Source of the DNA: Octopus sinensis
Taxonomy: Eukaryota
Length of the DNA stretch: 64,000 nt
Assembly (NCBI RefSeq): GCF_006345805.1
Contig: NC_043006.1
Coordinates: forward strand, 11,532,001-11,596,000
Direction: 5' to 3'
Shown here: positions 1,506 to 63,900 of the stretch, one piece after another
Layout of the letters: every line of letters begins with the position of its first letter
How positions within the stretch are numbered: position 1 is the first letter of the stretch
The notes under the pieces: model-generated
Seen by the model: the letters and a program-made list of their open reading frames with translations, nothing else
What the model was told of the DNA's origin: nothing
Databases searched by the model: none
Translations under genes and position numbers: made by a program

Positions 1506-2095
1506 AAGGCGACGAGCTGGCAGAAACGTTAGCACGCCGGGCGAAATGCTTTGCGGTATTTCGTCTGCCGCTACGTTGTGAGTTCAAATTCCGCCAAGGT
1601 CGACTTTGCCTTTCATCCTTTCGGGGTCGATAAATTAAGTACCAGTGACCCACTGGCGTCGATGTAATCGACTTAATCCGTTTGTCTGTCCTTGTTTATC
1701 CCCTCTATGTTTAGCCCCTTGTGAGTAATAAAGAAATAGGTATTTCGACTGCCGCTACGTTCTGAGTTCAAATTCCGCCGAGGTCGACTTTGCCTTTCAT
1801 CCTTTCGGGGTCGATTAAATAAGTTCGAGTTACGCACTGGGGTCGGTATAATCGACTTAATCCGTTTGTCTGTCCTTGTTTGTCCCCTCCGTATTTAGCT
1901 CCTTGTGGGTAGTAAAGAAATAGGTATTTCGTCTGTCTTTACGTGCTGAGTTCAAATTCCGCCGAGATCGACTTTGCCTTTCATCCTTACGGGGTCGATT
2001 AATTAAGTACCAGTTGCGTACTGGGATCGATCCGATCGACTGCCCCCCCCCCCTTCCCAAACATTTCAGGCCTTGTGCCTAGAGTAGAAGAGAAT
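1506..2095 (+). mobile_element. SINE-A trimer (tRNA-like head plus 3 body units; last unit has the variant tail)
   Basis: A-box-like TGGCAGAAACG, B-box GTTCAAATTCC, central GTCGACTTTGCCTTTCATCCTTTCGGGGTCGATAAATTAAGTACCAG (resembles Meta/Sauria-type central domains, from recall), and junctions AAGAAATA|GGTATTTCG. Confidence 0.85.
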
Positions 2096-2910
2096 CGTTA
2101 TCACGCTGGACGAAATGTTTAGCGGTATTTCGCCCGTCGTTATGTTCTGGGTTCAAATTCCGCCGAGATCGACTTTACCTTTCATCGTTTCGGAATCGAT
2201 AAATTAAGTATCGATAAAACACTAAGATCGATGTGATCGACTAGTCACCCCACCTAAAATTTCAGGCCGTGTGTCTTTTATAGAAGGAACTACGTGTAGG
2301 TGTTTATCTATTAAAGGGTGTCCGTGTGACGGAATACTCAGCCACTAACTTGTTAATTCACAAGTAGATTATTTAATTGATCGAACAAACGAATCCTTGT
2401 CGTCACGCGACGGAGATCCATCACTAACTCATCCCGTTAATCCACACTCTTATGAAAGGCTCCGCCTATGCTGCCCTATCTATGATCGTTGTGTCAACGG
2501 GGCCAATTCCATGTTGGACAGGGTATTCCAGTAGTTAGATGATTAATCCTAGCCATTGGAATTTAGGCAGAATTTGAACTTAGATCGCAGATGACCGGAT
2601 CAGGTATCTCAGAGCATCTTTGGGTAACGCTCTAACGACTTTACCGATTCACTGTTCTAAATAGTTACTTTACTTTTTCTCATTCGAAAGGATGAAAGGC
2701 AATGTTGACCCTGATGGATTTGAACCCACAGCATAGTGAATCGGAACAAAAATCGCTAGGTATTCTATCCGCCGGTCTAACAACACTGCTAATTCGCCAC
2801 CACGTATACATAACATTTACGGATAAACTCGGGTGTCATATGACGGGTAACCTTAGAAGTTTAACTTTTGTCACCATGGGAAATACCAGGAAGTATAGCA
2901 TATACATACT

Positions 2911-9599: not shown

Positions 9600-9650
9600 T
9601 TAAACTACTTTTCCGAAACTTATAGATATACTTTTCTACTATAAGGCGGC

Positions 9651-10058
9651 GAGCTGGCAGAATCGATAGCACGCCGGGCGAAATGCTTAGCGGTATTTCG
9701 TTTGCCGTTACGTTCTGAGTTCAAATTCCGCCGAGGTCGACTTTACCTTTCATCCTTTCGGGGTCGATAAATTAAGTACCAGTTACGCACTAGGGTCGAT
9801 GTAATCGACTTAATACATATATCTGTCCTTGTTTGTCCTGTCTGTGTTTAGCCTCTTGTGGGTAGTAAAGAAATAGGTATTTCGTCTGCCGTTACGTTCT
9901 GAGTTCAAATTCCGTCGAGGTCGACTTTGCCTTTTATCTTTTCGGGGTCGATTAAATAAGTACCAGTTACGCACTGGAGTCGATATAATCGACTTAATCT
10001 GTTTGTCAGTCCTTGCTTGTCCCCTCTATGTTTAGCCCATTGTGAGTAATAAAGAAAC
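9651..10058 (+). mobile_element. SINE-A dimer with TSD
   Basis: Full head plus 2 units; flanks AGATATACTTTTCTACTAT / AGATATTCTTTTCTACTTT. Confidence 0.85.
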
Positions 10059-10337
10059 AGATATTCTTTTCTACTTTAGGCACAAGGCCTGAAATTTTTG
10101 GTGAGTTGGGGGCCAGTCAATTAGGTCGACCCCAGTACGCAACTGGTACTTAATTTGTGCTTCAGATTTCATCCCTTGCCACTTAACTTCTGCAAAACTT
10201 ATAAAAACTTTTAGCATTTCTGGTAAAATGTAGAATTTCTAAAAAAGTTAAATTTGTACTTTGTATACTATAATACCTGTCTCTCTCTCACCTCTCTTTC
10301 TTCCATTCTTCTTTCTGCTTTTCGTTATTATATCATT

Positions 10338-11746: not shown

Positions 11747-12357
11747 AAGGCGGTGAGCTGGCAGAACCGTTAGCACGCCGGGCGAAATGCTTAGCCATAT
11801 TTCGTCTGCCGTTACGTTCTGAGTTCATATTCCACCGAGGTCGACTTTGCCTTTCATCCTTTCGGGGTCGATAAATTAAGCACCAGTTACGCACTGGGGT
11901 CGATATAATCGACTTAATCCGTTTGTCTGTCCTTGTTTGTCCCCTCTGTGTTTAGCCCCTTGTGGGTAGTAAAGAAATAGGTATTTCGTCTGACACTACG
12001 TTCTGAGTTCAAATTCTGCCGAGGTCGACTTTGCCTTTCATCCTTTCGGGGTCAATAAATTAAGCACCAGTTACGCACTGAGGTCGATGTAATCGACTTA
12101 ATCCGTTTGTCTGTCCTTGTTTATCCCCTCTCTGTTTAGCCCCTTGTGGGTAGTAAAGAAATGGGTATTTCGTCTGCCGTTACGTTCTGAATTCAAATTC
12201 AGCCGAGGTCGACTTTGCCTTTCATCCTTTCGCGGTCGATTAAATAAGTACCAGTTACGCACTGGGGTCGATATAATCGACTTAATCCGTTTGCCTGTCC
12301 TTGCTTGTCCCTTCTGTGTTTAGCCCCTTGTGGGTAGTAAAGAAATAGGTATTTCGT
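11747..12357 (+). mobile_element. SINE-A trimer ending in the start of a fourth unit
   Basis: Full head, junctions AAGAAATA|GGTATTTCG, terminal GGTATTTCGT. Confidence 0.9.
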
Positions 12358-13473: not shown

Positions 13474-13709
13474 TAAGGCGGCGAGCTGGCAGAATCGTTT
13501 GCACGTCGGGCGAAATGCGTAGCCGTATTTCGTCTGCTGTCACGTGTTCTGGGTCCAAATTCCGCCGAGGTCGACTTTGCCTTTCATCCTTTCGGGGTCG
13601 ATAAATTAAGTACCAGTTACGCACTGGGGTCGATGTAATCGACTTGATCCCTTTGACTGTCCTTGTTTGTCCCCTCTATGTTTAGCCCCTTGTGGGTAGT
13701 AAAGAAATA
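13474..13709 (+). mobile_element. Full-length SINE-A monomer
   Basis: Head to AAGAAAT; flanked by ACATGTATGT / ATATGTATGT. Confidence 0.9.
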
Positions 13710-13927: not shown

Positions 13928-13976
13928 CGTACATGTATGTGACATTGTATGTCTGCATGTGTGTATGTGTATATAT

Positions 13977-14156
13977 ATTTCTTTACTACCCACAGGGGGC
14001 TAAACACAGAGAGGACAAACAAGGACAGACAAAGGGATTAAGTCGATTACATCGACCCCAGTGCGCAACTGGTACTTAATTTATCGACCCCGAAAGGATG
14101 AAAGGCAAAGTCGACCTCGGCGGAATTTGAACTCAGAACGTAACGGCAAACGAAAT
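13977..14156 (-). mobile_element. Headless SINE-A unit with 16-bp TSD
   Basis: Starts at TATTTCG; TSD TGTGTATGTGTATATA. Confidence 0.85.
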
Positions 14157-14857
14157 ATGTGTATGTGTATATATGTATGTGCGTATGTGTGCATGCATGT
14201 AGGTATGTACGTGTATACATGCATGCATAAATGTATATATGAATGTGTCATGAATGTATGTATGTATGCATGTGTGTATGTGTAATATAATTTAAGTATA
14301 TAAAATTAGCATTGTTAGTTAAGGGTGATTTTTTCTTTTTCATACAATTTCATACTTTTATCATAATAATTAAAAAATGTTTTTTTTATTTTTCGCCGTT
14401 TCTACGCAAGCTGTTCTCAACTCAATTATCTCTCATTAAATGCCATTATAAAGCAGACATCATAGAATGTCATGGAGGGGAAGGATTTTCTTGAAAACAC
14501 TTCATAACGTCAACCAGTTGATGCGCCTGAGCAAATGAATAAAAGCAAATCATATGAGAATAACCAAGGAATTAAAGAGAGATCCATAAATATTTAAACC
14601 TAACAGCAACATCTGACAGGAAAATACGAGAGCTTGTTGTTGCTAACGTTCATCACAGGTATGCGCTTATTTTATCGAGTCTAAGATCCTTAAGGGAGAG
14701 TTTACGAAAAAAACAAAAGACGAAGACAGATGGTGTACAAAACAAACAGATGTATTAGTATAACGCTCAGGAATAGAAAAAGTATTTTACGCTTCGAGCC
14801 TACGCTCTTATACAGAAAGGGACACAGAAAAAACAAGGAGAAAAAAAAATGTGGGTA

Positions 14858-15270: not shown

Positions 15271-15812
15271 CTAACGATCTATCATGGCGACAGTACTACA
15301 TCTAAAAATGTATTGCTAAGATCCTTAACATGGACTTTGAATTTTATTAGAGTACATACAATATTGTGCAAAAAAATCCTTGACCTTAACCACTAGAACA
15401 TGTCCCTTAGTGTCTGGCAACATGTGCATATCTGGTCATGAGCAGGAGTAGTGGGGGAGCAGTGTAGCCATGTGTTGAGAGGGATTGTTTGGGGTTTGAA
15501 TAGATATAACAAAAGCAGTGTTTGAACGAAATATTAGCCATTTTTCATAATTTCTAGGGGTAAGCAAACAGTTGCTACCCAGGGACAAAAATTGAATTAC
15601 AATGTGTAATTATTGGCTTCAAATTTTGGCACAAGGCCAGTAATTTCGGGGGTAGGAGTAAGTCGATTACATCGGCCCCAGTACTCAACTGGTGCATATT
15701 TTACCGATCCCGAAAGGATGAAAGGCAGAGTAGACCTCAGTGTAATTTAAACTCAGAATGTAAAGACGAGTGAATTGCTGCAAAGGATTTTGTCCGGTGT
15801 GTCCACGATTCT

Positions 15813-15982
15813 TATTTCTTTACTACCCACAAGGAGCTACACACAGAGGGGACAAACAGCGACAGACAAACAGCGACAGACAAACGGATTAAGTCGATTA
15901 TATCGACCCCAGTGCGTAACTGGTACTTATTTAATCGACCCCGAAAGGATGAAAGGCAAAGTTGACCTCGGCGGAATTTGAA
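15813..15982 (-). mobile_element. 5'-truncated SINE-A
   Basis: Family body and tail. Confidence 0.85.
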
Positions 15983-16844
15983 TATTCTCTTTAAGTGAAC
16001 ATTTTTCTGGTTGAAATACACCGAAAAATGGCGACACAGTAGTAAAAAAATCGTAAAAAAATAGGGATTTTCATAGAAAAAAAAGCACCTTTTTGAAGTA
16101 AATAATTTTTGGTCTTATAGAGAGATTTATTAATAGAGGCATTGTCTAAATTTATCCCTTATCTGCTTTATTAAAAATTGTTAGACGCATTCTCAGACTT
16201 CGTTCTTTCCACCTGCTTGATCAGCAGTCACCAAAGAGTAAAGTCCTCTTCGGTCTTGAATGACCGTGGGATTGCACCTAGAAAGTTACTCTCGGAAGCA
16301 CGAGTCTGGGCAAGGTTGTTTATGGAAGACCAGCAGTCACCCATGCACACCAGCATCCTTTCTCTCTCCACGCCACCGATGTTATCCAAGAGATAACATC
16401 GGCGGCTTGGCACCAGTGACATTGCAACTCATTTCTACAGCTGAGTGAACTGGAGTAATATGAAATAGAGTGTCTTGCTCAATAACACAACACACAGCTT
16501 CGTCTGAGAATCGAACTCACTTCCTCATGATTGTGAGCCCAACGCTCAAACCACTGATCTAATAGTATAGTGACTGCTGGAGGCAATCACTATACTATTA
16601 AATTCGAGGCAATCACTATACTATTAAATTCGCAACGGTCTTGAGAGAATTGGTTAAGACAGCTTGCGTACATAACCTTTGGGCCAACTAAGAGCCTTTA
16701 GCTTTTTTTTTCAAGTTAGTGATTTTATTCTTGACTACACGAATCCTCTTTGTCATGACTGACCTATCTGATATGTCAATATGGCCTTCGATAGTTTTTT
16801 TTAACTATACATTTTAGTGACTTTCTGTGAAATGTCAATATCTA

Positions 16845-17076
16845 TTTCTTTACTACCCACAAGGGGCTAAACACAGAGAGGACAAACAAGGACAGACAAA
16901 TGGATTAAGTCGATTATATCGACCCCAGTGCGTAACTGGTACTTAATTTATCGACCCTGAAAGGATGAAAGGCATAGTCGACCTCGTGGGAATTTGAACT
17001 CAGAGCATAGCTGCAGACGAAATACCGCTAAGCATTTCGCTCGGCGTGCTAACGTTTCTGCCAGCTCGCCGCCTTT
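16845..17076 (-). mobile_element. Full-length SINE-A with 14-bp TSD
   Basis: TSD TGAAATGTCAATAT. Confidence 0.9.
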
Positions 17077-18511: not shown

Positions 18512-18846
18512 ATATTTCTTTACTGCCCACAAGGGGCTAAACATAGAGAAGACAAAAAAGGACAGACAAAGGGATTAAGTCGATTACATCGACCCCAGTG
18601 CGAAACTGGTACTTTATTTATTGACCCCGAAAGGATGAAAGGCAAAGTCGACCCCGGCAGAATTTGAACTCAGAACGTAACGGCAAACGAAATACGGCTA
18701 CGTCCCCCGTAACTTAGCGGTTCGGCAAAGGAGCCTGATGGAATAAGTACTAGGCTAACAAAGAATAAGTCCTGGGGTCAATTTGCTCGACTAAAGGCGG
18801 TGCTCCAGTATGGCCACAGTCAAATGACTGAACCAAGTAAAAGAGT
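18512..18846. mobile_element. SINE-A (-) fused to the 3' half of a SINE-B (+)
   Basis: Family sequences abut at about 18700. Confidence 0.8.
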
Positions 18847-19114
18847 ATACATCTACATATGCAATACTTCAACGCACCGTCAGTACTGTATTCTGGGATC
18901 ACTAGGTATTTCGGGTCCTGAAATAAACATCGTCCTTCGGGCGATAGGTGGGTCAAACACAGGCTTCTGTCCAAGTGGTATTCATCTGCACCATCTTGAT
19001 GCTTTCTCAGAAGCCTCAATTGGATCTTGATTATTCAAAGACAACTAAAAGACTAATGACTAATGACTAATTCATGATTATTGGAAGCTCTTTATATTCG
19101 AAGCATCATTTTGA

Positions 19115-19363
19115 TATTCTCTTTACTCTTTTACTTGTTTCAGTCATTTGGCTGCGGCCATGCTGGAGCACCGCCTTTAATCGAGCAACTCAACCCCGGG
19201 ACTTATTCTTTTGTAAGCCCAGTACTTATTCTATCGGTCTCTTTTGCCGAACCGCTAAGTAACGGGGACATAAACAAACCAGCATCGGTTGTCAAGCAAT
19301 GCTAGGGGGACAAACACAGACACACAAACACACAGACATACATATATATATATATATATATAT

Positions 19364-19426
<63 letters not shown>

Positions 19427-19640
19427 TACGACAGGCTTCTTTCAGTTTCCGTCTACCAAATCCACTTACAAGGTATTGGTCGGCCCGGAGCTATAGCAGA
19501 AGACACTTGCCCAAGATGCCACGCAGTGGGACTGAACCCGGAACCATGTGGTTGGTTAGCAAGCTACTTACCACACAGCCACTCCTGCATATACAGCGTT
19601 AGCAAGCTACTTACCACACAGCCACTCCTGCATATACAGC
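19115..19640 (-). mobile_element. SINE-B with a 43-bp tandem duplication of its 5' junction (19555-19640)
   Basis: GTTAGCAAGCTACTTACCACACAGCCACTCCTGCATATACAGC occurs twice. Confidence 0.9.
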
Positions 19641-19964
19641 AAGGATTTTAATACAGTCAATATTTACTGGGTTTTTTTATTAGTTTCGAATTCTGGCACA
19701 AAGCCAGCAATTTCGGAGGAGGAGGTACGTAGATTCTATCAATCCCAGTGCTCAGCTATTACTTATTTTATCGATCTTGAAATGAAGGAAGGCAAAGTCG
19801 ACTTTGACGAAACTGGACTCATAACTTAAAGATGAACGAAACGCCGCTAAACATTTTTCCCGGTTTACCAACGATTCTACCAGCTCACTGACTTGAGACA
19901 CGTGTTTTACTTTTTACATTAACTGTAAATGCTGTGAAATGTTTCTAAAATATTTCAAGAATCC

Positions 19965-20370
19965 AATGGCGCGTGCTTGGCCGTGTGGTAAGTAGCTTGC
20001 TTCCCAACCACATGGTTCCGGGTTCAGTCCCACTACGTGGTACCTTGGGCCAGTGTCTTCTACTACAGCCTTGGGCAAACCAAAGCCTTGTGAGTGGATT
20101 TGGTAGAGGGAACTGAAAGAAGCCCATTGCATATGTATATGTATATCTTTATGTGTGTGTCTTTATGTCTGTGCTTGTCTCCCCACCACCACCTCTTGAC
20201 AACCGATGTTGGTATGTTTACGTCCCCGTAACTTAGCGGTTCAGCAAAAGAGACAGATAGAATAAGTACCAAGCTTTCAAAGAATAAGTCATGGAGTCGA
20301 TTTCGTCAACTAAAAGGCAGTGCTCCAGCATGGTTGCAGTCAAATGACTGAAACTCATAAAAGAATAATG
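19965..20370 (+). mobile_element. SINE-B, diverged
   Basis: Family head and tail. Confidence 0.85.
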
Positions 20371-30658: not shown

Positions 30659-31097
30659 CTCTTACTCTTTTTACTCTTTTATTTGTTTCAGTCATTTTGA
30701 CTGCGGCCATGCTGGAGCACCGCCTTTAGTCGAGCAAATCGACCCCGGGACTTATTCTTTGTGAGCCTAGTACTTATTCTATCGGTCTCTTTTGCCGAAC
30801 CGCTAAGTGACGGGGACGTAAACACACTAGCATCGGTTGTCAAGCAATGCTAGGGGGACAAACACACACACACAAACACACACAAACACACACACACGCA
30901 CACATATATATATATATATATATATACATATATACGACAGGCTTCTTTCAGTTTCCGTCTACCAAATCCACTCACATGGCATTGGTCGGCCCGGGGCTAT
31001 AGCAGAAGACACTTGCCCAAGATGCCACGCAGCGGGACTGAACCCGGAACCATGTGGTTGGTTAGCAAGCTACTTACCACACAGCCACTCCTGCGCC
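30659..31097 (-). mobile_element. SINE-B
   Basis: Family head and tail. Confidence 0.9.
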
Positions 31098-33204: not shown

Positions 33205-33632
33205 CTTACTCTTTACTCTTTACTCTTTTACTTGTTTCAGTCATTTGACTGCGGCCATGCTGGAGCACTGCCTTTAGTCGAGCAACTCGACCCCGGGACT
33301 TATTCTTTGTAAGCCCAGTACTTATTCTATCGGTCTCTTTTGCTGAACCGCTAAGTGACGGGGACGTAAACACACCAGCATCATCGGTTGTCAAGCAATG
33401 CTAGAGGGACAAACACGGACACACAAACATATACACACACATACATACATATATATATACATATACATATGTACGACAGGCTTCTTTCAGTTTCCGTCTA
33501 CCAAATCCACTCACAAGGCTTTGGTCGGCCCGAGGCTATAGCAGAAGACACTTGCCCAAGATGCCACGCAGTGGGACTGAACCCGGAACCATGTGGTTGG
33601 TTAGCAAGCTACTTACCACACAGCCACTCCTG
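33205..33632 (-). mobile_element. SINE-B
   Basis: Family head and tail. Confidence 0.9.
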
Positions 33633-35056: not shown

Positions 35057-35432
35057 GTTTCTTTATTGGCCACACAGGGCTATACACAGATGGGACAAGT
35101 TACAAGGTAGAGCTTTTCTTTTGGGGGATGGAAAAAACAAAAAAAAAAGGAAAAAAAAAGAGGTGGCGTAGGTTTTCGATCAAAAGGGATCGTAAAAGGG
35201 AAAAAAGAACAAAAAAGAAAAAAAAAGAAAAAAAAGAAAAAAGGAAAAGGAACAAAAGAAAAGAGAAATGAAAAAAAGAAGAAAAAAGGGTAAAAAAAAG
35301 AGGGAAGAGGAAAAAACGATCAATAGGGATCGTGTATCACAGTGTTATGATATGGTGTTGTGTGTAAAGGGGAAAGCAAGTAAGGTTTATCCGTGGGAAG
35401 AAAAGCCTACGAAAAAGACCACGGTAACCTTG
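35057..35432 (-). mobile_element. 3' UTR/end of a non-LTR retrotransposon (L1/Tx1-like by recall), abutting (GATA)n
   Basis: Pyrimidine-rich minus strand ending GTGGCCAATAAAGAAAC; no coding sequence is present, so the clade assignment is inference. Confidence 0.6.
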
Positions 35433-37553: not shown

Positions 37554-37773
37554 CCCTTTCGTTACTGTATTTCTTTTGAGATGCTCTGTGTTTCTTTTAA
37601 TTACTTTAAATATAACAAAATATTTAGTAAAATAACTTAGTTATCATTGAGCTAGTGTTAGGAACATAAATTGTGACTAAGGTTCGGTGGAAGATTTTAA
37701 TTCAAACCTTATGAAAACAAGACATTTGTACTGAGAGCCAGAGCCGGTTTCAGCCGGGTTGGTAATGAAAGGG
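37554..37773. mobile_element. piggyBac-type MITE (220 bp)
   Basis: TTAA|CCCTTTCGTTAC ... GTAATGAAAGGG|TTAA. Confidence 0.85.
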
Positions 37774-37784
37774 TTAATTATTAA

Positions 37785-38250
37785 TATGAGAAGACTGGAG
37801 AGAAGACGGGAGAGGTATGAAGTGATATATGTCTGGAAGATCCTGGAAGGAATTGTGCCAAATTTTGGCATTGTAAGCTACACCAATGCTAGAACGGGAC
37901 GACACTGCATAGTGCCAAAGATCCCAGCAATGCCATCACGCTTCAGGACCAGCTTCTGCAACAGCATGGGTTTCAAGGGCCCACAGCTTTTTAATATTCT
38001 CCCAAAGAGTCTGAGGAACTTGCACAAAGTAGATGTAGCGGTTTTTAAATCAAAGCTGGACATCTTCCTGTCAAGAGTCCCAGATGAATCTACCTCACGG
38101 CAAGAGGTGCAAATGAGAGTAGCTGTATCAAACTCCATTCTTCACCAAGTGCCACATATTAGACGAGGTTCATCGTAATAACAGTGTAGCACAAAACGGC
38201 GGTGCATCAGCATGGCCGCAGCTCTGAGCTGAAACTAGAAAAAAAAAAAA
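37785..38250 (+). mobile_element. 5'-truncated CR1-type LINE 3' end (ORF2 C-terminus, 3' UTR, A-tail)
   Basis: LERRRERYEVIYVWKILEG..PNFG...GPQLFNILPKSLRN..FKSKLD.FL. Confidence 0.9.
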
Positions 38251-39271: not shown

Positions 39272-39499
39272 CTCTTTTTCTCTTTTCTCTTTTACTTGTT
39301 TCAGTCATTTGACTGCGGCTATGCTGGAGCACCGCCTTTTTAATCGAGCAACTCGACCCTGGGACTTATTCTTTTGTAAGCTCAGTACTTATTCTATGGG
39401 TCTCCTTTGCCGAACCGCTAAGTAACAGTGACATAAACACACCAGCATCGGTTGTCAAGCAATGCTAGGGGGACAAACACAGACACACAAACATACACA

Positions 39500-41092: not shown

Positions 41093-41364
41093 TATAATAA
41101 GCCTTATCCACGTAGACACACGCTGTTACGAGCACACATAAACGCAACACAAAGATGATCACGTACACTGAATAATTACATTTTTACATCTCTCACGCAC
41201 GTATATACACATACACGATACGCAGATACACCCAACAATCTTCAGCATTCTACATGATCAGTTATCATTTTAGCAGCAATCATTTCAGCTACACACGAAC
41301 ACACTGACACACAGTACAAAATGACAAAAAGCTGCTTTTCTGCGTCCCGTCACACACACATACA

Positions 41365-43804
41365 TATTTCTTTACTACGCACAAGGAGCTAAACACAGAG
41401 GGGACGAACAAGGACAGACAAACGGATTAAATCGATTACATCGACCCCAGTGCGTAACTGGTACTTATTTAATCGACCTCGAAAGGATGAAAAGCAAAGT
41501 CGACCTCGGCGTAATTTGAACTCAGAACGTAACGGCAGACGAAATACCTATTTCTTTACTACCCACAAGGGGCTAAACATAGAGAGGACAAACAAGGACA
41601 GACAAACGGATCAAGTCGATTACATCGACCCCAGTGCGCAACTGGTACTTATTTAATCGACCTCGAAAGGATGAAAAGCAAAGTCGACCTCGGCGTAATT
41701 TGAACTCAGAACGTAACGGCAGACGAAATACCTATTTCTTTACTACCCACAAGGGGCTAAACATAGAGAGGACAAACAAGGACAGACAAACGGATTAAGT
41801 CGATTACATCGACCCCAGTGCGCAACTGGTACTTATTTAATCGACCTCGAAAGGATGAAAAGCAAAGTCGACCTCGGCGTAATTCGAACTCAGAACGTAA
41901 CGGCAGACGAAATACCTATTTCTTTACTACCCACAAGGGGCTAAACATAGAGAGGACAAACAAGGACAGACAAACGGATCAAGTCGATTACATCGACCCC
42001 AGTGCGCAACTGGTACTTATTTAATCGACCTCGAAAGGATGAAAAGCAAAGTCGACCTCGGCGTAATTTGAACTCAGAACGTAACGGCAGACGAAATACC
42101 TATTTCTTTACTACCCACAAGGGGCTAAACATAGAGAGGACAAACAAGGACAGACAACGGATTAAATCGATTACATCGACCCCAGTGCGTAACTGGTACT
42201 TATTTAATCGAACTCGAAAGGATGAAAAGCAAAGTCGACCTCGGCGTAATTTGAACTCAGAACGTAACGGCAGACGAAATACCTATTTCTTTACTACCCA
42301 CAGGGGCTAAACATAGAGAGGACAAACAAGGACAGACAAACGGATCAAGTCGATTACATCGACCCCAGTGCGCAACTGGTACTTATTTAATCGACCTCGA
42401 AAGGATGAAAAGCAAAGTCGACCTCGGCGTAATTTGAACTCAGAACGTAACGGCAGACGAAATACCTATTTCTTTACTACTACCCCACAAGGGGCTAAAC
42501 ATAGAGAGGACAAACAAGGACAGACAAACGGATCAAGTCGATTACATCGACCCCAGTGCGCAACGGTACTTATTTATCGACCTCGAAAGGATGAAAAGCA
42601 AAGTCGACCTCGGCGTAATTTGAACTCAGAACGTAACGGCAGACGAAATACCTATTTCTTTACTACCCACAAGGGGCTAAACATAGAGAGGACAAACAAG
42701 GACAGACAAACGGATCAAGTCGATTACATCGACCCCAGTGCGCAACTGGTACTTATTTAATCGACCTCGAAAGGATGAAAAGCAAAGTCGACCTCGGCGT
42801 AATTTGAACTCAGAACGTAACGGCAGACGAAATACCTATTTCTTTACTACCCACAAGGGGCTAAACATAGAGAGGACAAACAAGGACAGACAAACGGATT
42901 AAGTCGATTACATCAACCCCAGTGCGTAACTGGTACTTATTTAATCGACCTCGAAAGGATGAAAAGCAAAGTCGACCTCGGGGTAATTTGAACTCAGAAC
43001 GTAACGGCAGACGAAATACCTATTTCTTTACTACCCACAAGGGGCTAAACATAGAGAGGACAAACAAGGACAGACAAACGGATCAAGTCGATTACATCGA
43101 CCCCAGTGCGTAACTGGTACTTATTTAATCGACCTCGAAAGGATGAAAAGCAAAATCGACCTCGGCGTAATTTGAACTCAGAACGTAACGGCAGACGAAA
43201 TACCTATTTCTTTACTACCCACAAGGGGCTAAACATAGAGAGGACGAACAAGGACAGACAAACAGATTAAGTCGATTACATCGACCCCAGTGCGTAACTG
43301 GTACTTATTTAATCGACCTCGAAAGGATGAAAAGCAAAGTCGACCTCGGCGTAATTTGAACTCAGAACGTAACGGCAGACGAAATACCTATTTCTTTACT
43401 ACCCACAAGGGGCTAAACATAGAGAGGACGAACAAGGACAGACAAACAGATTAAGTCGATTACATCGACCCCAGTGCGTAACTGGTACTTATTTAATCGA
43501 CCTCGAAAGGATGAAAAGCAAAGTCGACCTCGGCGTAATTTGAACTCAGAACGTAACGGCAGACGAAATACCTATTTCTTTACTACCCACAAGGGGCTAA
43601 ACATAGAGAGGACGAACAAGGACAGACAAACAGATTAAGTCGATTACATCGACCCCAGTGCGTAACTGGTACTTATTTAATCGACCTCGAAAGGATGAAA
43701 AGCAAAGTCGACCTCGGCGTAATTTGAACTCAGAACGTAACGGCAGACGAAATACTGCTAAGCATTTCGTCCTGCGTGCTAACGGTTCTGCCAGCTCGCC
43801 GCCT
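41365..43804 (-). repeat. SINE-A-derived tandem array: one full head plus 13 units of about 184 bp
   Basis: 12 GAAATACCTATTTC junctions spaced about 184 bp; full head at 43750-43804. Confidence 0.95.
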
Positions 43805-44995
43805 TGTTTTACACACACACATACAGATACACACATGCAACAACACAAGCATACAACACAGAAAATAAAGAGCTATGCACACAGATATTACCTTTCCATG
43901 CCCCTCACAGACAAACACGAACACATAATACGCACGCGCACAAATACGCATAGAATCAAGCACCATTTAACCTCCATCTTATTTCCGGTCAGTCAGTGGC
44001 TAAGCTTGTAGACCAACATTGCGTGGCTTCTCTTTTCCGGGATTACGCGATTGCGCTTTCTAATTCCCTTTTCCCAGTGTCCTCGTCCTTCCCCCTTTTC
44101 TTTTTTTTATTCTCCGAAGAAAGAGGGTTGAAATATTATGGTCCCTAATTAAGTCTCTCCCTTCTCTCAGTTATGTCTGTCTGTCTCTGTCTGTCTCTGC
44201 CTTTCTCTCTCTATATGTGTGTGTGTGTATGTAGAAGATATACATAAAGACCGGGCATATCTGTCTGTCTGTCTATCTATCTTTTTTTTCTCTCTCTTCT
44301 TCTCCTCTCACGTGACTGCTGTTCAACTGGTCTTTTCGCCTTTGACCGCTGCCATGTTAACACTGTTGTCTTCGTCTGCCGCAAAGGCATTTTTTCAAAA
44401 TACGCCAGCCAAGATAAGTTAGATTGTCTGAAGTCGTAGGACACCCGCTGTTTTTGTCCTGTTATTACTATTCCTGTTTTTTTATTTTTTGTTTCTTGTA
44501 TTTATTTTCGTGTGGCATCGTCCGGTTTTCTGTCCTAGTTTCGTATACATTCGATCCTTTTTCCAAAAAATCTAATGCTCGTAGCTTAGTTTTTCCTTGG
44601 CGCTGGCCGGATTGGAGCGATATCAGGATTAATCAGCCGAAATTGCTCAGATGATCCAGTTCCTGACTGAAGATTAGAGGCTTCGAATGACCCGTCTGTT
44701 TTTTTGTGTCGTCTCTTTGTGTGGTTTGCGTTCTTGTCCCCTTTTGTAATTTCTATATATAATGTTTATACATATATATATATATATAATAAATATTAGG
44801 GAATAAATCCAAACTTACAGGGAAAATCAGATTTAGGATTGAATCCAATTTTATAGTAAAATATTATATTATATTAAATTAGAGACAAAACCACTATTAG
44901 GCAAATCAAACTATGAAAGACTTATGCCAATAAATATGATTAATTTATATTATTTAAATATGTAACAAAATTATTAAAAAAATATAATTAATATC

Positions 44996-46814: not shown

Positions 46815-47217
46815 TACTCTTTTACTCTTTTACTCTTTTACTTGTTTCAGTCATTTGACTGCGGCCATGCTGGAGCACCGCCTTTAATTGAGCAACTCGA
46901 CCCCGGGACTTATTCTCTTGTAAGCCCAGTACTTATTCTATCGGTCTCTTTTGCCGAACCGCTAAGTAATGGGGACATAAACACACCAGCATCGGTTGTC
47001 AAGCAATGCTAGGGGGACAAACACAGACACACGCATATATATATACATATATACGACGGGCTTCTTTCAGTTTCCATCTACCAAATCCACTCACAAAGCA
47101 TTGGTCGGCCCGAGGCTATAGTAGAAGACACTTGCCCAAGGTGCCACGCAGTGAGACTGAACCCGGAACCATGTGGTTGGTAAACAAGCTACTTACCACA
47201 CAGCCACTCCTGCGCCT
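46815..47217 (-). mobile_element. SINE-B
   Basis: Family head and tail. Confidence 0.9.
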
Positions 47218-47291: not shown

Positions 47292-47510
47292 AAGGCGGTG
47301 AGTTGGCAGAATCGTTAGCGCACCGGACAAAATGCTTAGCAGCATTTCAATCCGTCTATACGTTCTGAGTTCAAATTCCGCTGAGAGCGACTTTGCCTTT
47401 CATCCTTTCGTGGGGGTGGATAAAATAAGTGCCAGTTAAATACTGGGGTGGATGCAATCGACTTGCCTCTTCCTACAAAATTCCCACCTTTGTGCCTCTA
47501 GCAGAACAGA
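47292..47510 (+). mobile_element. SINE-A variant-tail monomer, diverged
   Basis: Head and central domain. Confidence 0.8.
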
Positions 47511-47608
47511 TTATTTGTAACTTAAATTAATGTTCCTCCAAAGCCGATGTCCCCAAAAAAGAACCATTTCACGTTCTCACGAATGTTCATAAACTACCTA
47601 TGATGTTA

Positions 47609-48079: not shown

Positions 48080-48404
48080 AAGAAGATATATATATATATA
48101 CGACGGACTTCTTTCAGTTTCCGCCTACCAAACCGATTCACGAGGCTTAGGTCGCCCCGAAGTTATAGTAGGGGACAATTGCCCAGAGAGCCACGCAATG
48201 GGACTGAACCCGGAACCATGTGGTTGCTTGAGAAGCAAGCTTCTTTTATTCATTTCATTTGCCATAGAGGCAGTAGAAAGATGGGTAGCTTTGCGGGTTG
48301 AACAAGACATTGATGAGGCGAATGATAATTATACAAGATGATAAGGATGGGAGAAGACAGAAAGCGTCCGCCGAACCTCTGCTTCTCTACAACATTGTTC
48401 TTTT

Positions 48405-49116
48405 AAAAACGCTGCTGGAGAGGACCGATCAGGTAAAGGACCTGGGTATCTTGGTGGATTCCTCCTTGTCGCCTTCGGCCCAGTGCGTCCATGCTGCCAA
48501 CAAAGCACGCGGAATTCTGTTCTTGATTCGACGGTCGTTCGGAATGCTCACAGCAGCCATATTCCTTCCACCCTATGTCACGCTGGTGAGACCCATATTG
48601 GAATACGGGATTCAAGCCTCTTCTCCTTATCTCCTCAAAGACATACAGCATCTCGAAAGAGTCCAGAAGCTGGCTACCCGCATGGTTCATGGTCTCAAAA
48701 ATTTGTCCTATGAAGAAAGGCTGAAGACGCTCGACCTTTATTCTCTAGAAAAACGCCGCCGCCGTGGTGATCTCATTCTCGCCCATAGCATCATAAGCGG
48801 AAAGTGTAACCTCTTGAAAGAGCTGTTCTTCACTCCTGCTTCAGAGCGTCGGCTGCGGGGTCATTCCGAAAAGCTCTACCTGCGACGATTTCATCCCAAT
48901 CGAAGGAGAGGAGCTTTCTCCGTTCAGGTTGCGGATCCGTGGAACAAGCTGCCAGACGAGATGGTGAAGATGCCGACGACCGCTTTGTTCAAAGCCTCCC
49001 TTGATCTCAAGTGGCCTGAACTCTTTACATGAACACCACCCTGTACTTAACTCCATGTCCCCCTACATGGCCTTGCTATTTGCTTTTGTGCCAAATTAAC
49101 TAACTAACTAACTAAC
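48405..49116 (+). mobile_element. 5'-truncated CR1/L2-type LINE (RT C-terminal about 205 codons open, 3' UTR, (CTAA)n tail)
   Basis: VKDLGILVDSSL..SAQC..AANKA...LVRPILEYG...LERVQKLATRM..GLKNLSYEERL..LDLYSLEKRRRRGDLI. Confidence 0.92.
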
Positions 49117-51620: not shown

Positions 51621-51853
51621 AAGGCGGCGCGCTGGCAGAAACGTTAGCACGCCGGGCGAAATGCTTAGCGGTATTTCGTCTGTCTTTACGATCTGAGTTC
51701 AAATTCCGCCGAGGTCGACTTTGCCTTCCATCCTTTCGGGGTCGATTAAATAAGTACCAGTTACGCACTGGGGGCAATGTAATTGACTTAACCCTTTTGT
51801 GTGTCCTTGTTCGTCCTTTCTGTGTTTAGCCCCTTGTGGCCAATAAAGAAATA
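51621..51853 (+). mobile_element. SINE-A monomer inserted in an old SINE-C-like copy (about 51380-51950)
   Basis: Flanks GGTTCGTGTGTTTGTGA / GGTACGTGTGTTTGTGA. Confidence 0.85.
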
Positions 51854-58338: not shown

Positions 58339-58373
58339 ATATATATATAGAAAATAGTAAAAAGTGAAAAAAC

Positions 58374-58437
58374 AATTTTGGGTAAAATTTTCCGTGAAAA
58401 TTTTCGAAAAGTTTTTGGGTAAAATTTTCGGTGAAAA
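58374..58437. repeat. Short copy of the palindromic AAAATTTTCG minisatellite
   Basis: Same units as 61108-61497. Confidence 0.8.
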
Positions 58438-59410
58438 AGTCTCCCACGCAATACAAAACCCTGAAAATATTGCGCATCTGCAACATGAGCTGGACACAAT
58501 ATACAGGTGGGCTGAGGATAACAACATGCAGTTTAATGCAGGTAAGTTCCAGGCCCTGCGCTACTGGCACACAAAGGTAAATGACGTGAAGACTGGATAC
58601 ACTGGCCCAGGAAGAATTGCAATCCCTGAGTCAAAATCAGTGCGTGACCTGGGCATTGACATGAGCAATGATGCATCTTTCCAAATGCATATTGCTAATC
58701 TGGTGATAAAATGCAGACGGCTAGCTGGATGGATTCTCCGAACTTTCAGAACAAGAGAGAAGGAGACACTGATGGTCCTATGGAAAACATTCGTCCTCAG
58801 CCGCTTGGACTACTGCTCCCAACTTTGGTCACCACACAAATAAACAAACAGCAGAACTCGAAGCAATTCAGAGAAGCTACACAAAGAAAATCGTCTCAAT
58901 GCAAAATATCAGCTACTGGGAAAGACTGAAGGTATTAAACCTCTTCTCCCTAGAGCGGAGGCGGGAGAGATATGCAGTGATATACATCTGGAAACTCTTG
59001 GAGGGTCTTGTCCCAAACTTTGGCATTCAAAGTTACCCCAACCGCAGAACGGGGCGCCGCTGCGTGGTGCCAAGGATTCCAACATCACCATCAAAATACA
59101 GGTCCATATACAGCAACAGCTTGGGGTTTCAGAGGACCACAGCTCTATAACATCCTCCCTAAATGCCTGAGAGACTTACATGGTATAGATGTGGGTTTCT
59201 TTAAAACTAAACTGGATCTCTTCTTGTTGGGAGTCCCAGATGAACCTACCTCACGACAGGAGACGCGGATGCGGGCAGCAGCATCGAACTCCCTTGTTGA
59301 TCAAGTGCCACGTATCAGAGGTGGATTCACAAACTAGTGTAGCTCATTCAGCGGTGGTGTCCCAGCATGGCCGCGGCCTTCGGGCTAAAACATTTTAAAG
59401 GATTTAAGGA
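58438..59410 (+). mobile_element. 5'-truncated CR1-type LINE (RT C-terminus with stop and frameshifts, 3' UTR)
   Basis: LQHELDTIYRWAEDNNMQFNAGKFQAL...VRDLGIDMSNDASF..HI...SRLDYCSQLWSP...SYWERLKVLNLFSLERRRERY. Confidence 0.92.
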
Positions 59411-59732: not shown

Positions 59733-60164
59733 TGGCGCAGGAGTGGCTGTGTGGTAAGTAGCTTGCTTACCAACCACATGATTCCGGGTTCAGTCCCACT
59801 GCGTGGCACCTTGGGCTAGTGTCTTCTACTATAGCCTCGGGCCGACCAAAGCCTTGTGAGTGGATTTGGTAGACGGAAACTGAAAGAAGCCCGTCATATA
59901 TATGTATATAAAAATGTATATGTGTGTGTGTGTATCTGTGTGTGTGTGTAAATGTTTGTGTGTCTGTGTTTGTCCCCCCCCCCCAACATCGCTTGACAAC
60001 CGATGGTGGTGTGTTTACGTCCCCTTAAAATTAGCGGTTCGGCAAAAGAGACCGATAGAAGAGGCTTCCAAAGAATAAGTCCCGGGGTTGCTTTTCTCGA
60101 ATAAAGGCGGTGCTCCAGCATGGCCGCAGTCAAATGACTGAAACAAGTAAAAGAGTAAAAGAGA
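59733..60164 (+). mobile_element. SINE-B
   Basis: GGCGCAGGAGTGGCTGTGTGGTAAG head; CCAGCATGGCCGCAGTCAAATGACTGAAACAAGTAAAAGAG tail. Confidence 0.92.
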
Positions 60165-60454
60165 TTATATCAATGTGTGTGTGTCTTTGTTTCTGTGTTT
60201 GTCCCACAGCACTGCTCAACAACCATTACTTAGCAGTTCGGCAAAGAAACCAATAGAACAAGTACTTATAAGCATATGTATACACACACACATACACATA
60301 CATACACACTCACGTGCACGCGCGCGAACATGCACACACACACATACATGCACACACATATGCATATATCCATGTGTGTTAAGGTTGTCCTATTTCGGTT
60401 ATTTCAACCAATCAATGACGTGTATTCAGCTGAATAAAATTACTGCCGTTGAGC

Positions 60455-61105
60455 AGGATGGCGACAAAGTGCAGACGACTGGCTGGCTGGATCCTAAGAA
60501 CATTCAGAACCAGAGATAAGGAAACCATGATGGTCCTCTGGCGGACATTCGTCCTCAGTCGCCTGGATTACTGCTCACAGCTAGGGTCACCCACCAGTGT
60601 AAAATTAACAGCGGACCTTGAAGCAATCCAGAGAAGATTCACAAAGAAGATCGTCTCTTTGCAACAGCTCAGCTACTGGGAAAGATTGAAACAGCTAAGA
60701 ATCTACTCCCTGGAGAGAAGACGGGGGAGGTATGCAGTGATATATGTCTGGAAGATCCTGGAAGTAATTGTGCCAAATTTTGGCATTGTAAGCTACACCA
60801 ATGCTAGAACGGGACGACACTGCATAGTGCCAAAGATCCCAGCAATGCCATCACGCTTCAGGACCAGCTTCTGCAACAACCTGGGTTTCAAGGGCCCACA
60901 GCTTTTTAATATTCTCCCAAAGAGTCTGAGGAACTTGCACAAAGTAGATGTAGCGGTTTTTAAATCAAAGCTGGACATCTTCCTGTCTAGAGTCCCAGAT
61001 GAATCTACCTCACGGCAAGAGGTGCAAATGAGAGTAGCTGTATCAAACTCCATTCTTCACCAAGTGCCACATATTAGACGAGGTTCGTCGTAATAACAGT
61101 GTAAC
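60455..61105 (+). mobile_element. CR1-type LINE ORF2 C-terminal fragment, truncated at both ends
   Basis: 214-aa ORF; overlap nearly identical to 37790-38185. Confidence 0.92.
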
Positions 61106-61107
61106 AA

Positions 61108-61497
61108 AAAAGTTTTCCGTAAAACTTTCGAAAAATTTTTGCCTAAAAATTTTCAAAAACTTTTGGGTAAAATTTTCGAAAAATTTTTGGTGAAAATTTT
61201 TGAAAAGTTTTTGGGTAAAATTTTCGGTGAAAATTTTCGAAAAATTTTTGGGGAAAATTTTGAAAAATTTTTAGGTAAAATTTTCGGCGAAAATTTTCGA
61301 AAAGATTTTGGGGGAAATTTTCGGGTAAAATTTTCGAAAAATTTTCTTTGAAAACTTTCGAAAATCTTTTGGGTAAAATTTTCGGTGAAAATTTTCGAAA
61401 AATTTTTGGGTAAAATTTTCGAAAAGATTTTGGGGAAAATTTTTGGGTAAAATTTTCGGTGAAAATTTTCGAAAAGATTTTGGGGAAAATTTTCGGT
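61108..61497. repeat. Palindromic minisatellite (about 36-bp units built on GGGTAAAATTTTCGGTGAAAATTTTCGAAAAATTTTT)
   Basis: Direct reading. Confidence 0.9.
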
Positions 61498-63467: not shown

Positions 63468-63900
63468 GGATCTTTTCGGTTTGAACGGCAGTTTTTTTCT
63501 GGCGGTGTAATATGAAATTGTCACCCATAATTATGACCCTAGTATCGATCTATTGCATTTCAATCTGTTTTAGGGTTAGGGTTAGTTAGGGTTAGGGTTA
63601 GGGGTGGAGGGAAGGATATATTTTTTCTTCAGAAATGTAAATAAACCCAATCTGTTTCTTAAACGAGGGACATATTCATACGGCACAGAATGTTTTCACC
63701 TTCAATAGACGTCATTGATTGGTTGAAATTGCAGAAATTGAAGAAAAAAACAACAAATATCTTACAAACTATAGAATGTTCTCAATAAAGCCAAGAGCTA
63801 AGGATGTTTAATAAACACATTCTACCAGTATACGAAGTTTAAAAGTGTTTAGTTACGTGGAAATTATTTTAAAAAACTGCCGGTCAAATCGAAAAGATCC
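63468..63900. mobile_element. TIR-bounded non-autonomous DNA element containing (TTAGGG)n
   Basis: GGATCTTTTCGGTTTGAACGGCAGTTTTTT ... AAAAAACTGCCGGTCAAATCGAAAAGATCC; TTAGGG runs at 63570-63603. Confidence 0.8.

What the first reader, a model, noticed from the sequence alone, without database searches (positions are those of the whole stretch)
41365..43804. SINE multimerisation through an invariant tail-to-head-hairpin junction (13-unit array)
Seen: one full tRNA-like head followed by 13 head-to-tail 184-bp units. Every junction reads AAGAAATA|GGTATTTCG, and the same junction recurs at 1506-2095, 9651-10058 and 11747-12357. The head folds as GGCGAAATGC-ttagcg-GTATTTCGTC (10-bp stem with G:U pairs), the junction falls in that loop, and the 3' tail GAAATA can substitute for the 5' arm (GAAATA/TATTTC). 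Inference: the RNA 3' end pairs with the head to form a pseudo-circle, so LINE RT jumps from the loop to the 3' end and copies several rounds before finishing the head. This would be a ribozyme-free, rolling-circle-like route from SINE to satellite. For: all 13 units share private variants (CGACCTCG, GAAAAGC, CGTAATTTG), and a possible TSD (GTATGTGTGTGTG) flanks the array. Alternative: a dimeric master copy plus local unequal exchange; the last 3 units do share extra variants, and units of the shorter arrays differ at recurrent diagnostic sites. SINE-derived satellites are known in squamates; I do not know of a description in cephalopods.
Basis: partly seen in the sequence, partly recalled or inferred. 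Interest (0 to 1): 0.8.

Follow-up and report, generated by a model that had tools for sequence, protein, structure and literature searches.

The report
Octopus SINE multimers and a 13-unit array
A short mobile element (SINE) in an octopus-like genome occurs as head-plus-repeated-body multimers with one exact junction, but the 13-unit array looks like ordinary in-place DNA expansion of a short multimer, not a rolling-circle copying trick.

Summary
On the minus strand, one 47-nt head (43803-43757) is followed by 13 units of 183-186 bp, each equal to SINE positions 48-231. All 12 internal junctions read AAGAAATA|GGTATTTCG. A 14-bp target-site duplication (TSD) bounds the whole array. The same junction recurs in three shorter arrays in the window.

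The pseudo-circle, rolling reverse-transcription reading is not supported.
- The tail:arm pairing is worth -2 kcal/mol, with predicted probability of 1e-5 or less. The head hairpin pairs at 0.94 or more.
- Units of the short arrays were already different when inserted. The first units are type alpha and the last are type beta. One third unit belongs to another SINE family. Units never cluster by locus.
- The 13 units carry nested and mutually incompatible shared variants. The terminal unit keeps family-typical bases. All units share a TTTT-creating change and a box-B change.

Best reading has two layers. Short multimers are retrotransposed as multimers, or are made when the LINE reverse transcriptase leaves the hairpin loop and continues on another SINE RNA. 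The long array then grew in place by unequal exchange or slippage.

The same architecture is published for a bivalve and for squamates. I rate it a new member of a known kind, of moderate interest. No further cephalopod DNA could be reached, so the genome-wide tests remain undone.

The parts
43812..43825 (-). 5' copy of the target-site duplication of array D (TGTATGTGTGTGTG). It is followed by 8 extra A-rich bases, TAAAACAA (43811-43804).
   Evidence: 14/14 match to 41351-41364; no control window pair reached 14
43757..43803 (-). SINE head, positions 1-47. It holds a box-A-like motif and the 5' arm and loop of the head hairpin. It occurs once per array.
43205..43756 (-). Units D1-D3 (head-proximal). 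They are identical except the first base of D1. They share T127 and C159.
41549..43204 (-). Units D4-D12. They share T159 with each other, and T164/A169 with D1-D3. Subsets share G96 and G123. D6, D10 and D12 are identical.
41365..41548 (-). Unit D13, the 3'-terminal unit. Its 3' part keeps the family-typical C164 and G169. It shares T120 with D9. It ends in the complete tail AAGAAATA.
41351..41364 (-). 3' copy of the target-site duplication of array D
1508..2291 (+). Composite A. Head + A1 (alpha, 1555-1738) + A2 (beta, 1739-1922) + a Y-a-family element from position 48 to its own tail (1923-2095) + a Y-a copy from head position 15/20 (2091/2096-2291). The last join overlaps by AGAAT. Candidate TSD at 1490-1505 and 2292-2307 (13/16; all differences are transitions, CpG-decay type by my reading of the sequence).
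9645..10058 (+). Array B. Head + B1 (alpha) + B2 (beta). TSD AGATAT[A/T]CTTTTCTACT at 9624-9640 and 10059-10075.
11749..12357 (+). Array C. Head + C1 (alpha) + C2 (alpha) + C3 (beta) + the first 10 nt of a further unit (GGTATTTCGT, 12348-12357). No TSD found.
13976..14157 (-). M2, a single 5'-truncated copy starting at position 50 (TATTTCG) with a perfect 16-bp TSD (13960-13975 and 14158-14173)
18513..18700 (-). M4, a copy whose 5' end lies in the hairpin loop (position 44/45). It is fused to the middle of another abundant repeat (Rep-X). No TSD.
13477..13709 (+). M1, full-length monomer (alpha)
16843..17073 (-). M3, full-length monomer (alpha) with a 14-bp TSD
51623..51853 (+). M5, full-length monomer (beta) with a 17-bp TSD containing one mismatch
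15631..15982 (-). M7 (positions 76-231, beta). Its tail abuts, with no spacer, a Y-b-family copy that starts at head position 15.

Best explanation
The element is a 231-nt LINE-dependent SINE of an octopod. It has a head with box-A/B-like motifs and a stable hairpin, a core shared with sister SINE families, and its own tail ending AAGAAATA. The array unit is positions 48-231, that is, everything 3' of the hairpin loop.

Two layers explain the arrays.

(1) Short multimers of 2-3 units arrive by retrotransposition as multimers. Either a multimeric source (alpha unit first, beta unit last) is transcribed and copied, or the LINE reverse transcriptase, on reaching the hairpin loop, continues on the tail of a different SINE RNA instead of finishing the head. 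Either way the units are not re-copies of one RNA.

(2) The 13-unit array is a later, stepwise expansion of one such short insertion at the DNA level, by unequal sister-chromatid exchange or replication slippage, with exchange between units.

Shown: the structure, the TSDs, the difference between units at birth in the short arrays, the nested and recombinant variants in the long array, and the weakness of the tail:arm pairing.

Inferred: which of the two routes makes the short multimers, and that the long array started short.
For: SINE nature.
- 40 profile hits in 64 kb.
- Monomers and truncated copies carry 14-18 bp TSDs.
- The tail motif is found only in SINE copies.

Multimers inserted as units.
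- B has a 17-bp TSD, 16/17, P=0.003.
- D has a 14/14 TSD.
- A has a candidate TSD around a four-part composite.

Units different at birth.
- The linked markers ATAAATTAAG (alpha) and ATTAAATAAG (beta) give alpha first and beta last in A, B and C. Chance is about 0.01-0.016.
- Within-array divergence is 7-14%, the same as between loci.
- Within-locus clustering has 0-0.8% bootstrap support.
- The third unit of A is a Y-a-family element from position 48.

The loop as an RT-level hotspot.
- M2 starts at position 50 with a perfect TSD, and M4 starts at 44/45.
- Two further tail-to-internal-head joins occur at position 15, one with AGAAT microhomology.
- Double template jumps by LINE RTs and jumping by R2 RT are documented (PMC2104539, PMC8857657).
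- Read-through by Pol III is feasible, because there is no TTTT in the A and C units or in monomers M1 and M3.

DNA-level growth of D.
- Derived non-CpG variants are shared by 6, 6 and 2 units.
- Four-gamete failures occur at columns 96x123 and 120x159.
- D13 keeps the family states, and D1=D2=D3.
- Pairwise divergence ranges from 0 to 4.3%.
- The star model never reached the observed sharing, 0/5000.
- All 13 units share T58, which creates TTTT, and A39, which changes the CC of the box-B-like motif. These changes would cripple a Pol III source.
- 13 units is an outlier against 1, 1, 1, 2, 3 and 3.
Against: - The sample is one 64-kb window.
- The alpha/beta signal rests on two linked sites plus one partly linked site. 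The beta clade has only 37% bootstrap support.
- A dimer master does not explain the all-beta array D or the beta|Y-a junction.
- Recurrent jumps do not readily explain a junction that is exact to the base, with no added nucleotides, in all 17 cases. Truncation points vary (44, 50), and 5' junctions of single insertions carry 1-8 extra bases.
- Array C lacks a TSD and ends 10 nt into another unit.
- Concerted evolution could have overwritten an originally long RT-made array, so the starting unit number of D is unknown.
- T4 may not terminate Pol III in molluscs.
- The TSD of composite A is only 13/16, and both copies follow Y-a tails.
Confidence: 0.6

Rival explanations
1. The 3' tail pairs with the 3' arm of the head hairpin, so the RNA forms a pseudo-circle. 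The LINE RT then runs round the same RNA many times and makes 13 units in one insertion event.
For: - GAAATA and TATTTC are complementary, and the junction sits at the loop/arm boundary.
- One TSD bounds the array.
- All units share three private variants.
- The loop is a hotspot of cDNA ends.
Against: - The duplex is -2.0 kcal/mol against -12.7 to -17.1 for the hairpin. Pairing probability is 1e-5 to 1e-13, and forcing it costs 8-18 kcal/mol.
- Units of A-C are of different types, and one is from another family.
- D has nested and incompatible shared variants, and a terminal unit with family-typical bases. A single burst is rejected in simulation.
- The shared T58 makes a TTTT inside every unit.
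Confidence: 0.05
2. The 13-mer was made in one TPRT event by twelve successive jumps between different RNAs of a young beta subfamily. The shared variants would then reflect source-gene diversity, not later duplication.
For: - Intermolecular jumps are the simplest reading of the heterofamily joins in A and at M7.
- A single TSD bounds the array.
- Only a few unit types are present.
Against: - Twelve consecutive jumps is an extreme outlier against unit numbers of 1-3 at the other six head-bearing copies.
- Identical units are adjacent (D1-D3; chance about 0.04, from my own count of arrangements).
- The recombinant haplotypes would need recombinant source genes.
- No other copy in the window carries A39, T58 or A72.
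- The TTTT and the box-B change argue against an active Pol III source.
Confidence: 0.12
3. Purely DNA-level origin everywhere. The junction arose once as a microhomology-mediated tandem duplication of positions 48-231 at one founder locus, for example at an insertion whose 3' flank began GGTA. That founder then became a transcribed multimeric master. No RT template jump is involved.
For: - The junction is invariant, with no added bases.
- Order is alpha first, beta last.
- M5 shows that a flank can start GGTA right after the tail.
- C ends 10 nt into a further unit, as expected from a multimeric transcript.
- Unequal recombination is the mechanism proposed for bivalve and squamate arrays (PMC11481361, PMC10702118).
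Against: - It does not explain the beta|Y-a junction at the same position 48.
- It does not explain the all-beta array D.
- It does not explain the excess of 5' truncations in the loop, or the other tail-to-position-15 joins.
Confidence: 0.2
4. The unit count of 13 is an assembly artefact, through expansion or collapse of a repeat.
For: Tandem arrays of 184-bp units at 97% identity are hard to assemble. No reads were available.
Against: Units carry distinct, ordered variants and indels, with unique flanks on both sides and a matching TSD. This affects only the number, not the structure.
Confidence: 0.08

Closest known systems
TSD1-(SINE)n-TSD1 arrays of HCD SINEs in the blood clam Scapharca broughtonii (Martelossi et al. 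2024, PMC11481361)
   Same: It is a mollusc. One TSD pair bounds the array. Only the first unit has the complete tRNA-related head. Internal units share one head truncation point. The last unit has the complete tail. Arrays run to 4-15 units. Some arrays include units of another family.
   Different: There the internal units are also truncated in the tail. Here every unit keeps the full tail and joins exactly at the hairpin loop. There the authors invoke unequal recombination between TSDs. Here short arrays at independent loci share one junction, which requires inheritance or a repeatable RT event.
SINE-derived satellites (sSats) of squamates (Vassetzky et al. 2023, PMC10702118)
   Same: These are tandem repeats of a portion of a SINE, with a longer terminal unit reaching the SINE terminus. 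There are many loci. Longer arrays are more homogeneous. The proposed route is a library of short duplications followed by amplification of a few.
   Different: The host is a vertebrate and the SINE families are different. Arrays reach about 1000 units. No TSD-bounded retrotransposed multimers were reported there.
Multimeric and dimeric SINEs (Alu; Dip/B1/B2 multimers, PMC8466645)
   Same: Head-to-tail SINE multimers make up a large share of copies. It is undecided whether they arise by insertion into tails or by transposition of dimeric templates.
   Different: Those multimers are built of full-length units, each with its own head. Here only the first unit has a head.
Chimeric retrocopies made by LINE RT template jumps (tripartite chimeras in Magnaporthe, PMC2104539; R2 RT jumping in vitro, PMC8857657)
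   Same: Several RNA-derived segments are fused directly and bounded by one TSD. The join runs from the 5' end of one copy to the 3' end of the next.
   Different: Those jumps occur at template 5' ends and often add non-templated bases. Here the donor site is internal, at a hairpin loop, and the junction is exact.
Octopus CORE-SINE OR2 (Ohshima and Okada 1994, cited in PMC4758252)
   Same: It is an octopus tRNA-related SINE with a conserved core. The present core resembles the CORE/MIR motif, but this rests on my memory of the MIR consensus and is only a lead.
   Different: No OR2 sequence was available for comparison, so identity is untested.

Membership tests
LINE-mobilised SINE | Dispersed copies flanked by variable target-site duplications | tested here: met
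   TSDs of 14-18 bp at M2, M3, M5, M6, B and D
LINE-mobilised SINE | 5'-truncated copies sharing the 3' end | tested here: met
   Copies start at positions 44/45, 50, 76 and 104, and all end at AAGAAATA
LINE-mobilised SINE | Head derived from a tRNA, with an internal Pol III promoter | tested here: inconclusive
   Box-A-like TGGCAGAATCG and box-B-like GAGTTCAAATTCC are present by eye. ARAGORN found 0 genes. Rfam gave no tRNA match at gathering or at E<=10.
LINE-mobilised SINE | Tail shared with a partner LINE | not testable with these tools
   The tail motif occurs only in SINE copies in the window. LINE fragments are present but have other 3' ends.
SINE-derived satellite / TSD-(SINE)n-TSD array | Tandem units equal to a portion of the SINE, with a terminal unit extending to the SINE end | tested here: met
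   Unit = positions 48-231; the head occurs only once
SINE-derived satellite / TSD-(SINE)n-TSD array | Same repeat structure at several loci | tested here: met
   Four loci in 64 kb with different flanks
SINE-derived satellite / TSD-(SINE)n-TSD array | Homogenisation within long arrays, with divergent edge units | tested here: met
   D units differ by 0-4.3% against 7-14% in the short arrays. D13 is the most divergent.
Rolling-circle-like RT product of one pseudo-circular RNA | Tail-to-head pairing that competes with the native fold | tested here: not met
   Probability is 1e-5 or less; ddG is +8 to +18 kcal/mol
Rolling-circle-like RT product of one pseudo-circular RNA | Units of an array identical at birth (cluster by locus, star-like variation) | tested here: not met
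   A-C units are of different types and never cluster by locus. D has nested and incompatible variants.
Rolling-circle-like RT product of one pseudo-circular RNA | Junction-containing or circular RNA exists | not testable with these tools
   No RNA data
Transposing dimeric SINE (master dimer) | Position-specific diagnostic differences shared across loci | tested here: met
   Alpha first and beta last in A, B and C. The sample is small, with P about 0.01-0.016.
Transposing dimeric SINE (master dimer) | A TSD around the whole dimer | tested here: met
   B 16/17. A is probable. C is not found.
Transposing dimeric SINE (master dimer) | All multimers trace to one architecture | tested here: not met
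   D is all beta. A carries a Y-a unit at the same junction.

The most novel reading that the evidence does not exclude
The loop of the SINE head hairpin is a programmed exit point for the LINE reverse transcriptase. The cause might be RNA cleavage or a tRNA-type base modification in the anticodon-like loop. From there the enzyme either ends the copy or resumes precisely at the tail of another SINE RNA. Reverse transcription would then routinely make head-plus-n-bodies seeds, which DNA exchange later inflates into satellites. That would be a general, RNA-level first step from SINE to satellite.
Probability: 0.3. Interest if true: 0.6.

Novelty: new member of a known kind. Interest (0 to 1): 0.35.

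Why it matters
How dispersed repeats turn into tandem satellites is only partly understood. Here the seed stage is visible. Short multimers bounded by TSDs share one exact junction at independent loci, next to one locus that has started to inflate. If the junction is made by reverse transcriptase at a structured site, then SINE-derived satellites in molluscs and squamates may begin at the RNA level rather than by chance DNA duplication. Such arrays would also matter for repeat annotation in octopus genomes, where SINEs are about 11.6% of the DNA (PMC13282606) and these arrays would be split between SINE and tandem-repeat categories. As the evidence stands, the finding is a clear example of a published architecture in a new group of animals, not a new mechanism.

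Tried and rejected
1. More cephalopod copies, attempt one. I translated an ORF spanning the junction and searched the protein collection. There were no hits.

2. Public DNA scans.
- The junction 19-mer in metagenome contigs gave two chance matches with no SINE similarity.
- A conserved 25-mer found nothing in the bacterial/archaeal genome collection or the viral collection.

3. Octopus loci through LINE ORFs.
- One ORF has a 91% relative on Octopus vulgaris chromosome OX597823.1, which gave locus L003. This supports an octopod origin.
- L003 holds only one sister-family SINE copy.
- The second LINE ORF gave no close relatives.
- Window ORFs are not on record.

4. tRNA identity of the head. ARAGORN and Rfam gave nothing.

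5. A 4-unit or 2-unit higher-order period in D. Differences at offsets of 1-7 units show no clear minimum. D6/D8/D10/D12 are near-identical, which is suggestive but not demonstrated.

6. A TSD for array C or for the M7+Y-b composite. None was significant. The flank of C shows only a non-significant resemblance to a deleted unit.

7. Independent insertion of a truncated SINE right after an existing tail, as the source of the joins. I rejected this by reasoning from the TPRT mechanism. Such an insertion would duplicate the old tail, or 14-18 bp of flank, on both sides of the newcomer. That is not seen at any junction.

8. A partner LINE in the window. The tail motif occurs only in SINE copies and in one short fragment at 35058-35106.
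Full report
WHAT IS THERE

The array is real. TRF reports 41360-43755 with period 184, 13.0 copies and 97% matches. The sense strand of the element is the minus strand. Read that way, there is one 47-nt head (43803-43757, GGCGGCGAGCTGGCAGAACCGTTAGC...) followed by 13 units of 184 bp (one of 186 and two of 183). Each unit ends in ...GTAGTAAAGAAATA. The 12 internal junctions all read AAGAAATA|GGTATTTCGTCTGCC.

The array is bounded by an exact 14-bp duplication, TGTATGTGTGTGTG (43825-43812 and 41364-41351). It begins at the first base after the last tail. Although both flanks are TG-rich, none of about 3000 control window pairs from the same flanks reached 14.

THE ELEMENT

A profile built from seven head-bearing copies finds 40 segments in the 64-kb window. 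The monomer is 231 nt and has no poly(A). The tail AAGAAATA abuts the TSD directly.

- Full monomers are M1 (13477-13709), M3 (17073-16843) and M5 (51623-51853).
- 5'-truncated copies are M2 (from position 50), M4 (44/45), M7 (76) and M6 (104).
- TSDs of 14-18 bp are seen at M2, M3, M5, M6, B and D.
- Sister families share positions 1-166 but carry other tails. I call them Y-a (...TTTCAGGCCTTGTGCCTAGAGTAGAAAAGAAT) and Y-b.

So this is a LINE-dependent SINE superfamily with exchangeable tails.

The head contains box-A/B-like motifs, but ARAGORN and the Rfam tRNA model do not recognise it. 'tRNA-like' therefore stays unproven.

A LINE ORF in the window is 91% identical to a protein encoded on Octopus vulgaris chromosome OX597823.1. 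That locus carries a sister-family SINE copy. An octopod origin is therefore supported.

THE HAIRPIN AND THE PSEUDO-CIRCLE

The head hairpin (5' arm ...GCGAAATGC, loop about TTAGC, 3' arm GGTATTTCGTC...) is predicted with pair probabilities of 0.94-1.0 in five copies. Its core is kept in both families, with G-U/G-C alternation. The unit starts at G48, the first base of the 3' arm.

- It is worth -2.0 kcal/mol, against -12.7 to -17.1 for the hairpin arms.
- Its ensemble probability is 1e-5 to 1e-13.
- Forcing it costs 8-18 kcal/mol.

THE SHORT ARRAYS

Arrays A, B and C have unrelated flanks and are independent insertions. B has a 17-bp TSD (16/17, P=0.003).

Two linked sites define unit types. 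Alpha is ATAAATTAAG and beta is ATTAAATAAG.
- The arrays read A = alpha, beta, then a third unit; B = alpha, beta; C = alpha, alpha, beta.
- Among single copies, five are alpha and two are beta.
- Alpha first and beta last in 3 of 3 arrays has a chance probability of about 0.01-0.016.
- Within-array divergence (A1-A2 10.3%, B1-B2 13.7%, C 7-10%) equals divergence between loci.
- In NJ bootstraps, units of one array essentially never pair (A1+A2 0.8%, B1+B2 0%, C1+C2+C3 0%). Beta units group together only weakly (37%).

The units of a short array were not copies of one RNA.

The third unit of A is a Y-a-family element running from position 48 to the Y-a tail. It is joined to the beta tail by the same junction. 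It is followed, without spacer, by another Y-a copy that starts at head position 15/20 and overlaps by AGAAT, which is both the end of the Y-a tail and head positions 15-19.

A candidate TSD brackets this whole four-part composite: ATGTGCGGGTGTTTAT at 1490-1505 and ACGTGTAGGTGTTTAT at 2292-2307. All three differences are transitions, which I read as CpG-decay type. The shared 9-mer has P=0.02.

Elsewhere, the tail of M7 abuts a Y-b copy that also starts at head position 15. Two of four 5'-truncated copies begin inside the 7-nt loop zone (P about 0.005).

Together these observations point to events during reverse transcription at particular head positions. The cDNA either ends there or continues on another SINE RNA. 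LINE RTs are known to behave this way (PMC2104539, PMC8857657).

Against purely recurrent jumps, all 17 junctions are exact to the base. By contrast, truncation points vary, and ordinary 5' junctions carry 1-8 extra bases. Array C also ends 10 nt into a further unit and has no TSD. That fits a multimeric source transcript better. The units of A and C, and monomers M1 and M3, contain no TTTT, so Pol III could read through a multimer. I cannot separate 'multimeric master' from 'recurrent jump' with one window, and both may operate.

THE 13-UNIT ARRAY

All 13 units are beta and share three changes seen in no other unit: A39, T58 and A72. Beyond that, the variation is not star-like.
- G96 is in D6-8 and D10-12.
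- G123 is in D4, D6-8, D10 and D12.
- T120 is in D9 and D13.
- T127 is in D1-3.
- C159 is in D1-3 and D13.
- G96, G123 and T120 are not CpG changes.
- Columns 96x123 and 120x159 each show all four haplotypes.
- D13 alone keeps the family-typical C164 and G169, while D1-12 share T and A.
- D1, D2 and D3 are identical, and pairwise differences run from 0 to 4.3%.

A star model with the same number of events and a tenfold CpG boost never produced a variant shared by six units (0/5000).

T58 creates a TTTT in every unit, and A39 alters the CC of the box-B-like motif. An RNA carrying both changes would be a poor Pol III product, so they more likely arose in the DNA copy and spread with it.

Unit numbers at the seven head-bearing copies are 1, 1, 1, 2, 3, 3 and 13.

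The simplest account is stepwise in-place growth with exchange between units and a less homogenised edge unit, which is the usual behaviour of satellites. Homogenisation could have overprinted an initially longer array. The firm statement is therefore narrower: DNA-level exchange has shaped this array, and its present length says nothing about RT processivity.

WHAT IS KNOWN

- The architecture is published for the blood clam Scapharca broughtonii: one TSD pair, a full head only in the first unit, a common head truncation in the rest, and a complete tail at the end. Arrays there have 4-15 units, some with units of other families (PMC11481361).
- SINE-derived satellites with an extended terminal unit are described in squamates, together with a 'library of short duplications, then amplification' model (PMC10702118).
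- SINE multimers of undecided origin are common in rodents (PMC8466645).
- I found no description for cephalopods in the held library. Recent octopus repeat surveys do not mention it. The library is incomplete.

VERDICT

It is a new member of a known kind, of moderate interest. The decisive tests are a genome-wide census, a search for the A39/T58/A72 haplotype, comparison of orthologous loci, and RNA end mapping. None could be run, because no further cephalopod DNA was reachable.

Noticed in passing
window 17908-18051, 18701-18850, 19124-19267, 30672-30815, 33221-33363, 46831-46974, 15107-15253, 39287-39426, 60018-60157, 20224-20367, 2890-3058, 4265-4414: An abundant unrelated repeat, which I call Rep-X, has about 12 copies. 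It starts with (TACTCTTT)n TACTTGTTTCAGTCATTTGAC... and contains an internal (CA)n(TA)n microsatellite. Many of the window's microsatellites belong to it. Its class was not determined.
   Followed up: partly
window 18690-18730 (minus strand): SINE copy M4 is fused at its loop (position 44/45) to the middle of a Rep-X copy, which is cut off there. No TSD is present. The Rep-X sequence at the join loosely resembles SINE head positions 14-40. The cause could be a template switch, a recombination, or an insertion with target deletion.
   Followed up: partly
window 1339-1490, 1923-2291, 10059-10175, 4448-4640, 7790-8017, 15631-15812, 17333-17477, 19723-19889, 47294-47520: Sister SINE families share head and core (positions 1-166) but carry at least two other tails (Y-a and Y-b). 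This is a modular superfamily with exchangeable LINE-type tails. Array B inserted into the tail of an inverted Y-a copy.
   Followed up: partly
window 37759-38178, 48298-49032, 58364-58843, 60449-61093: These are C-terminal reverse-transcriptase fragments of at least two LINE families. The 48298 ORF is 91% identical to a protein on Octopus vulgaris chromosome OX597823.1. Neither family ends in the SINE tail.
   Followed up: partly
window 61107-61495 and 58374-58436: AT-rich tandem arrays with periods of 12, 24, 36 and 61 bp (AAAATTTTCG / AAAAATTTTTGGG motifs) lie directly beside two copies of the same LINE fragment. They may be part of that element.
   Followed up: no
window 63570-63603: A short interstitial run of the telomere-type repeat TTAGGG, about 6 copies.
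   Followed up: no
window 35058-35106 (minus strand): An isolated 3' fragment of the SINE tail (positions about 184-229) is preceded by a long T-rich tract and followed by (TATC)n. It is either an extreme 5' truncation or the end of the unknown partner LINE.
   Followed up: no
window 3894-4005, 19555-19640, 5026-5227: There are perfect two-copy tandem duplications of 56 bp and 43 bp, and a 22-bp repeat with 9 copies at 97% identity. Local tandem duplication appears to be active in this region independently of the SINE.
   Followed up: no
window 15850-15890 (minus strand, inside M7): M7 carries an internal 14-bp tandem duplication (GTTTGTCTGTCGCT) in the tail region. TRF also reports it at 15851-15885.
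   Followed up: no
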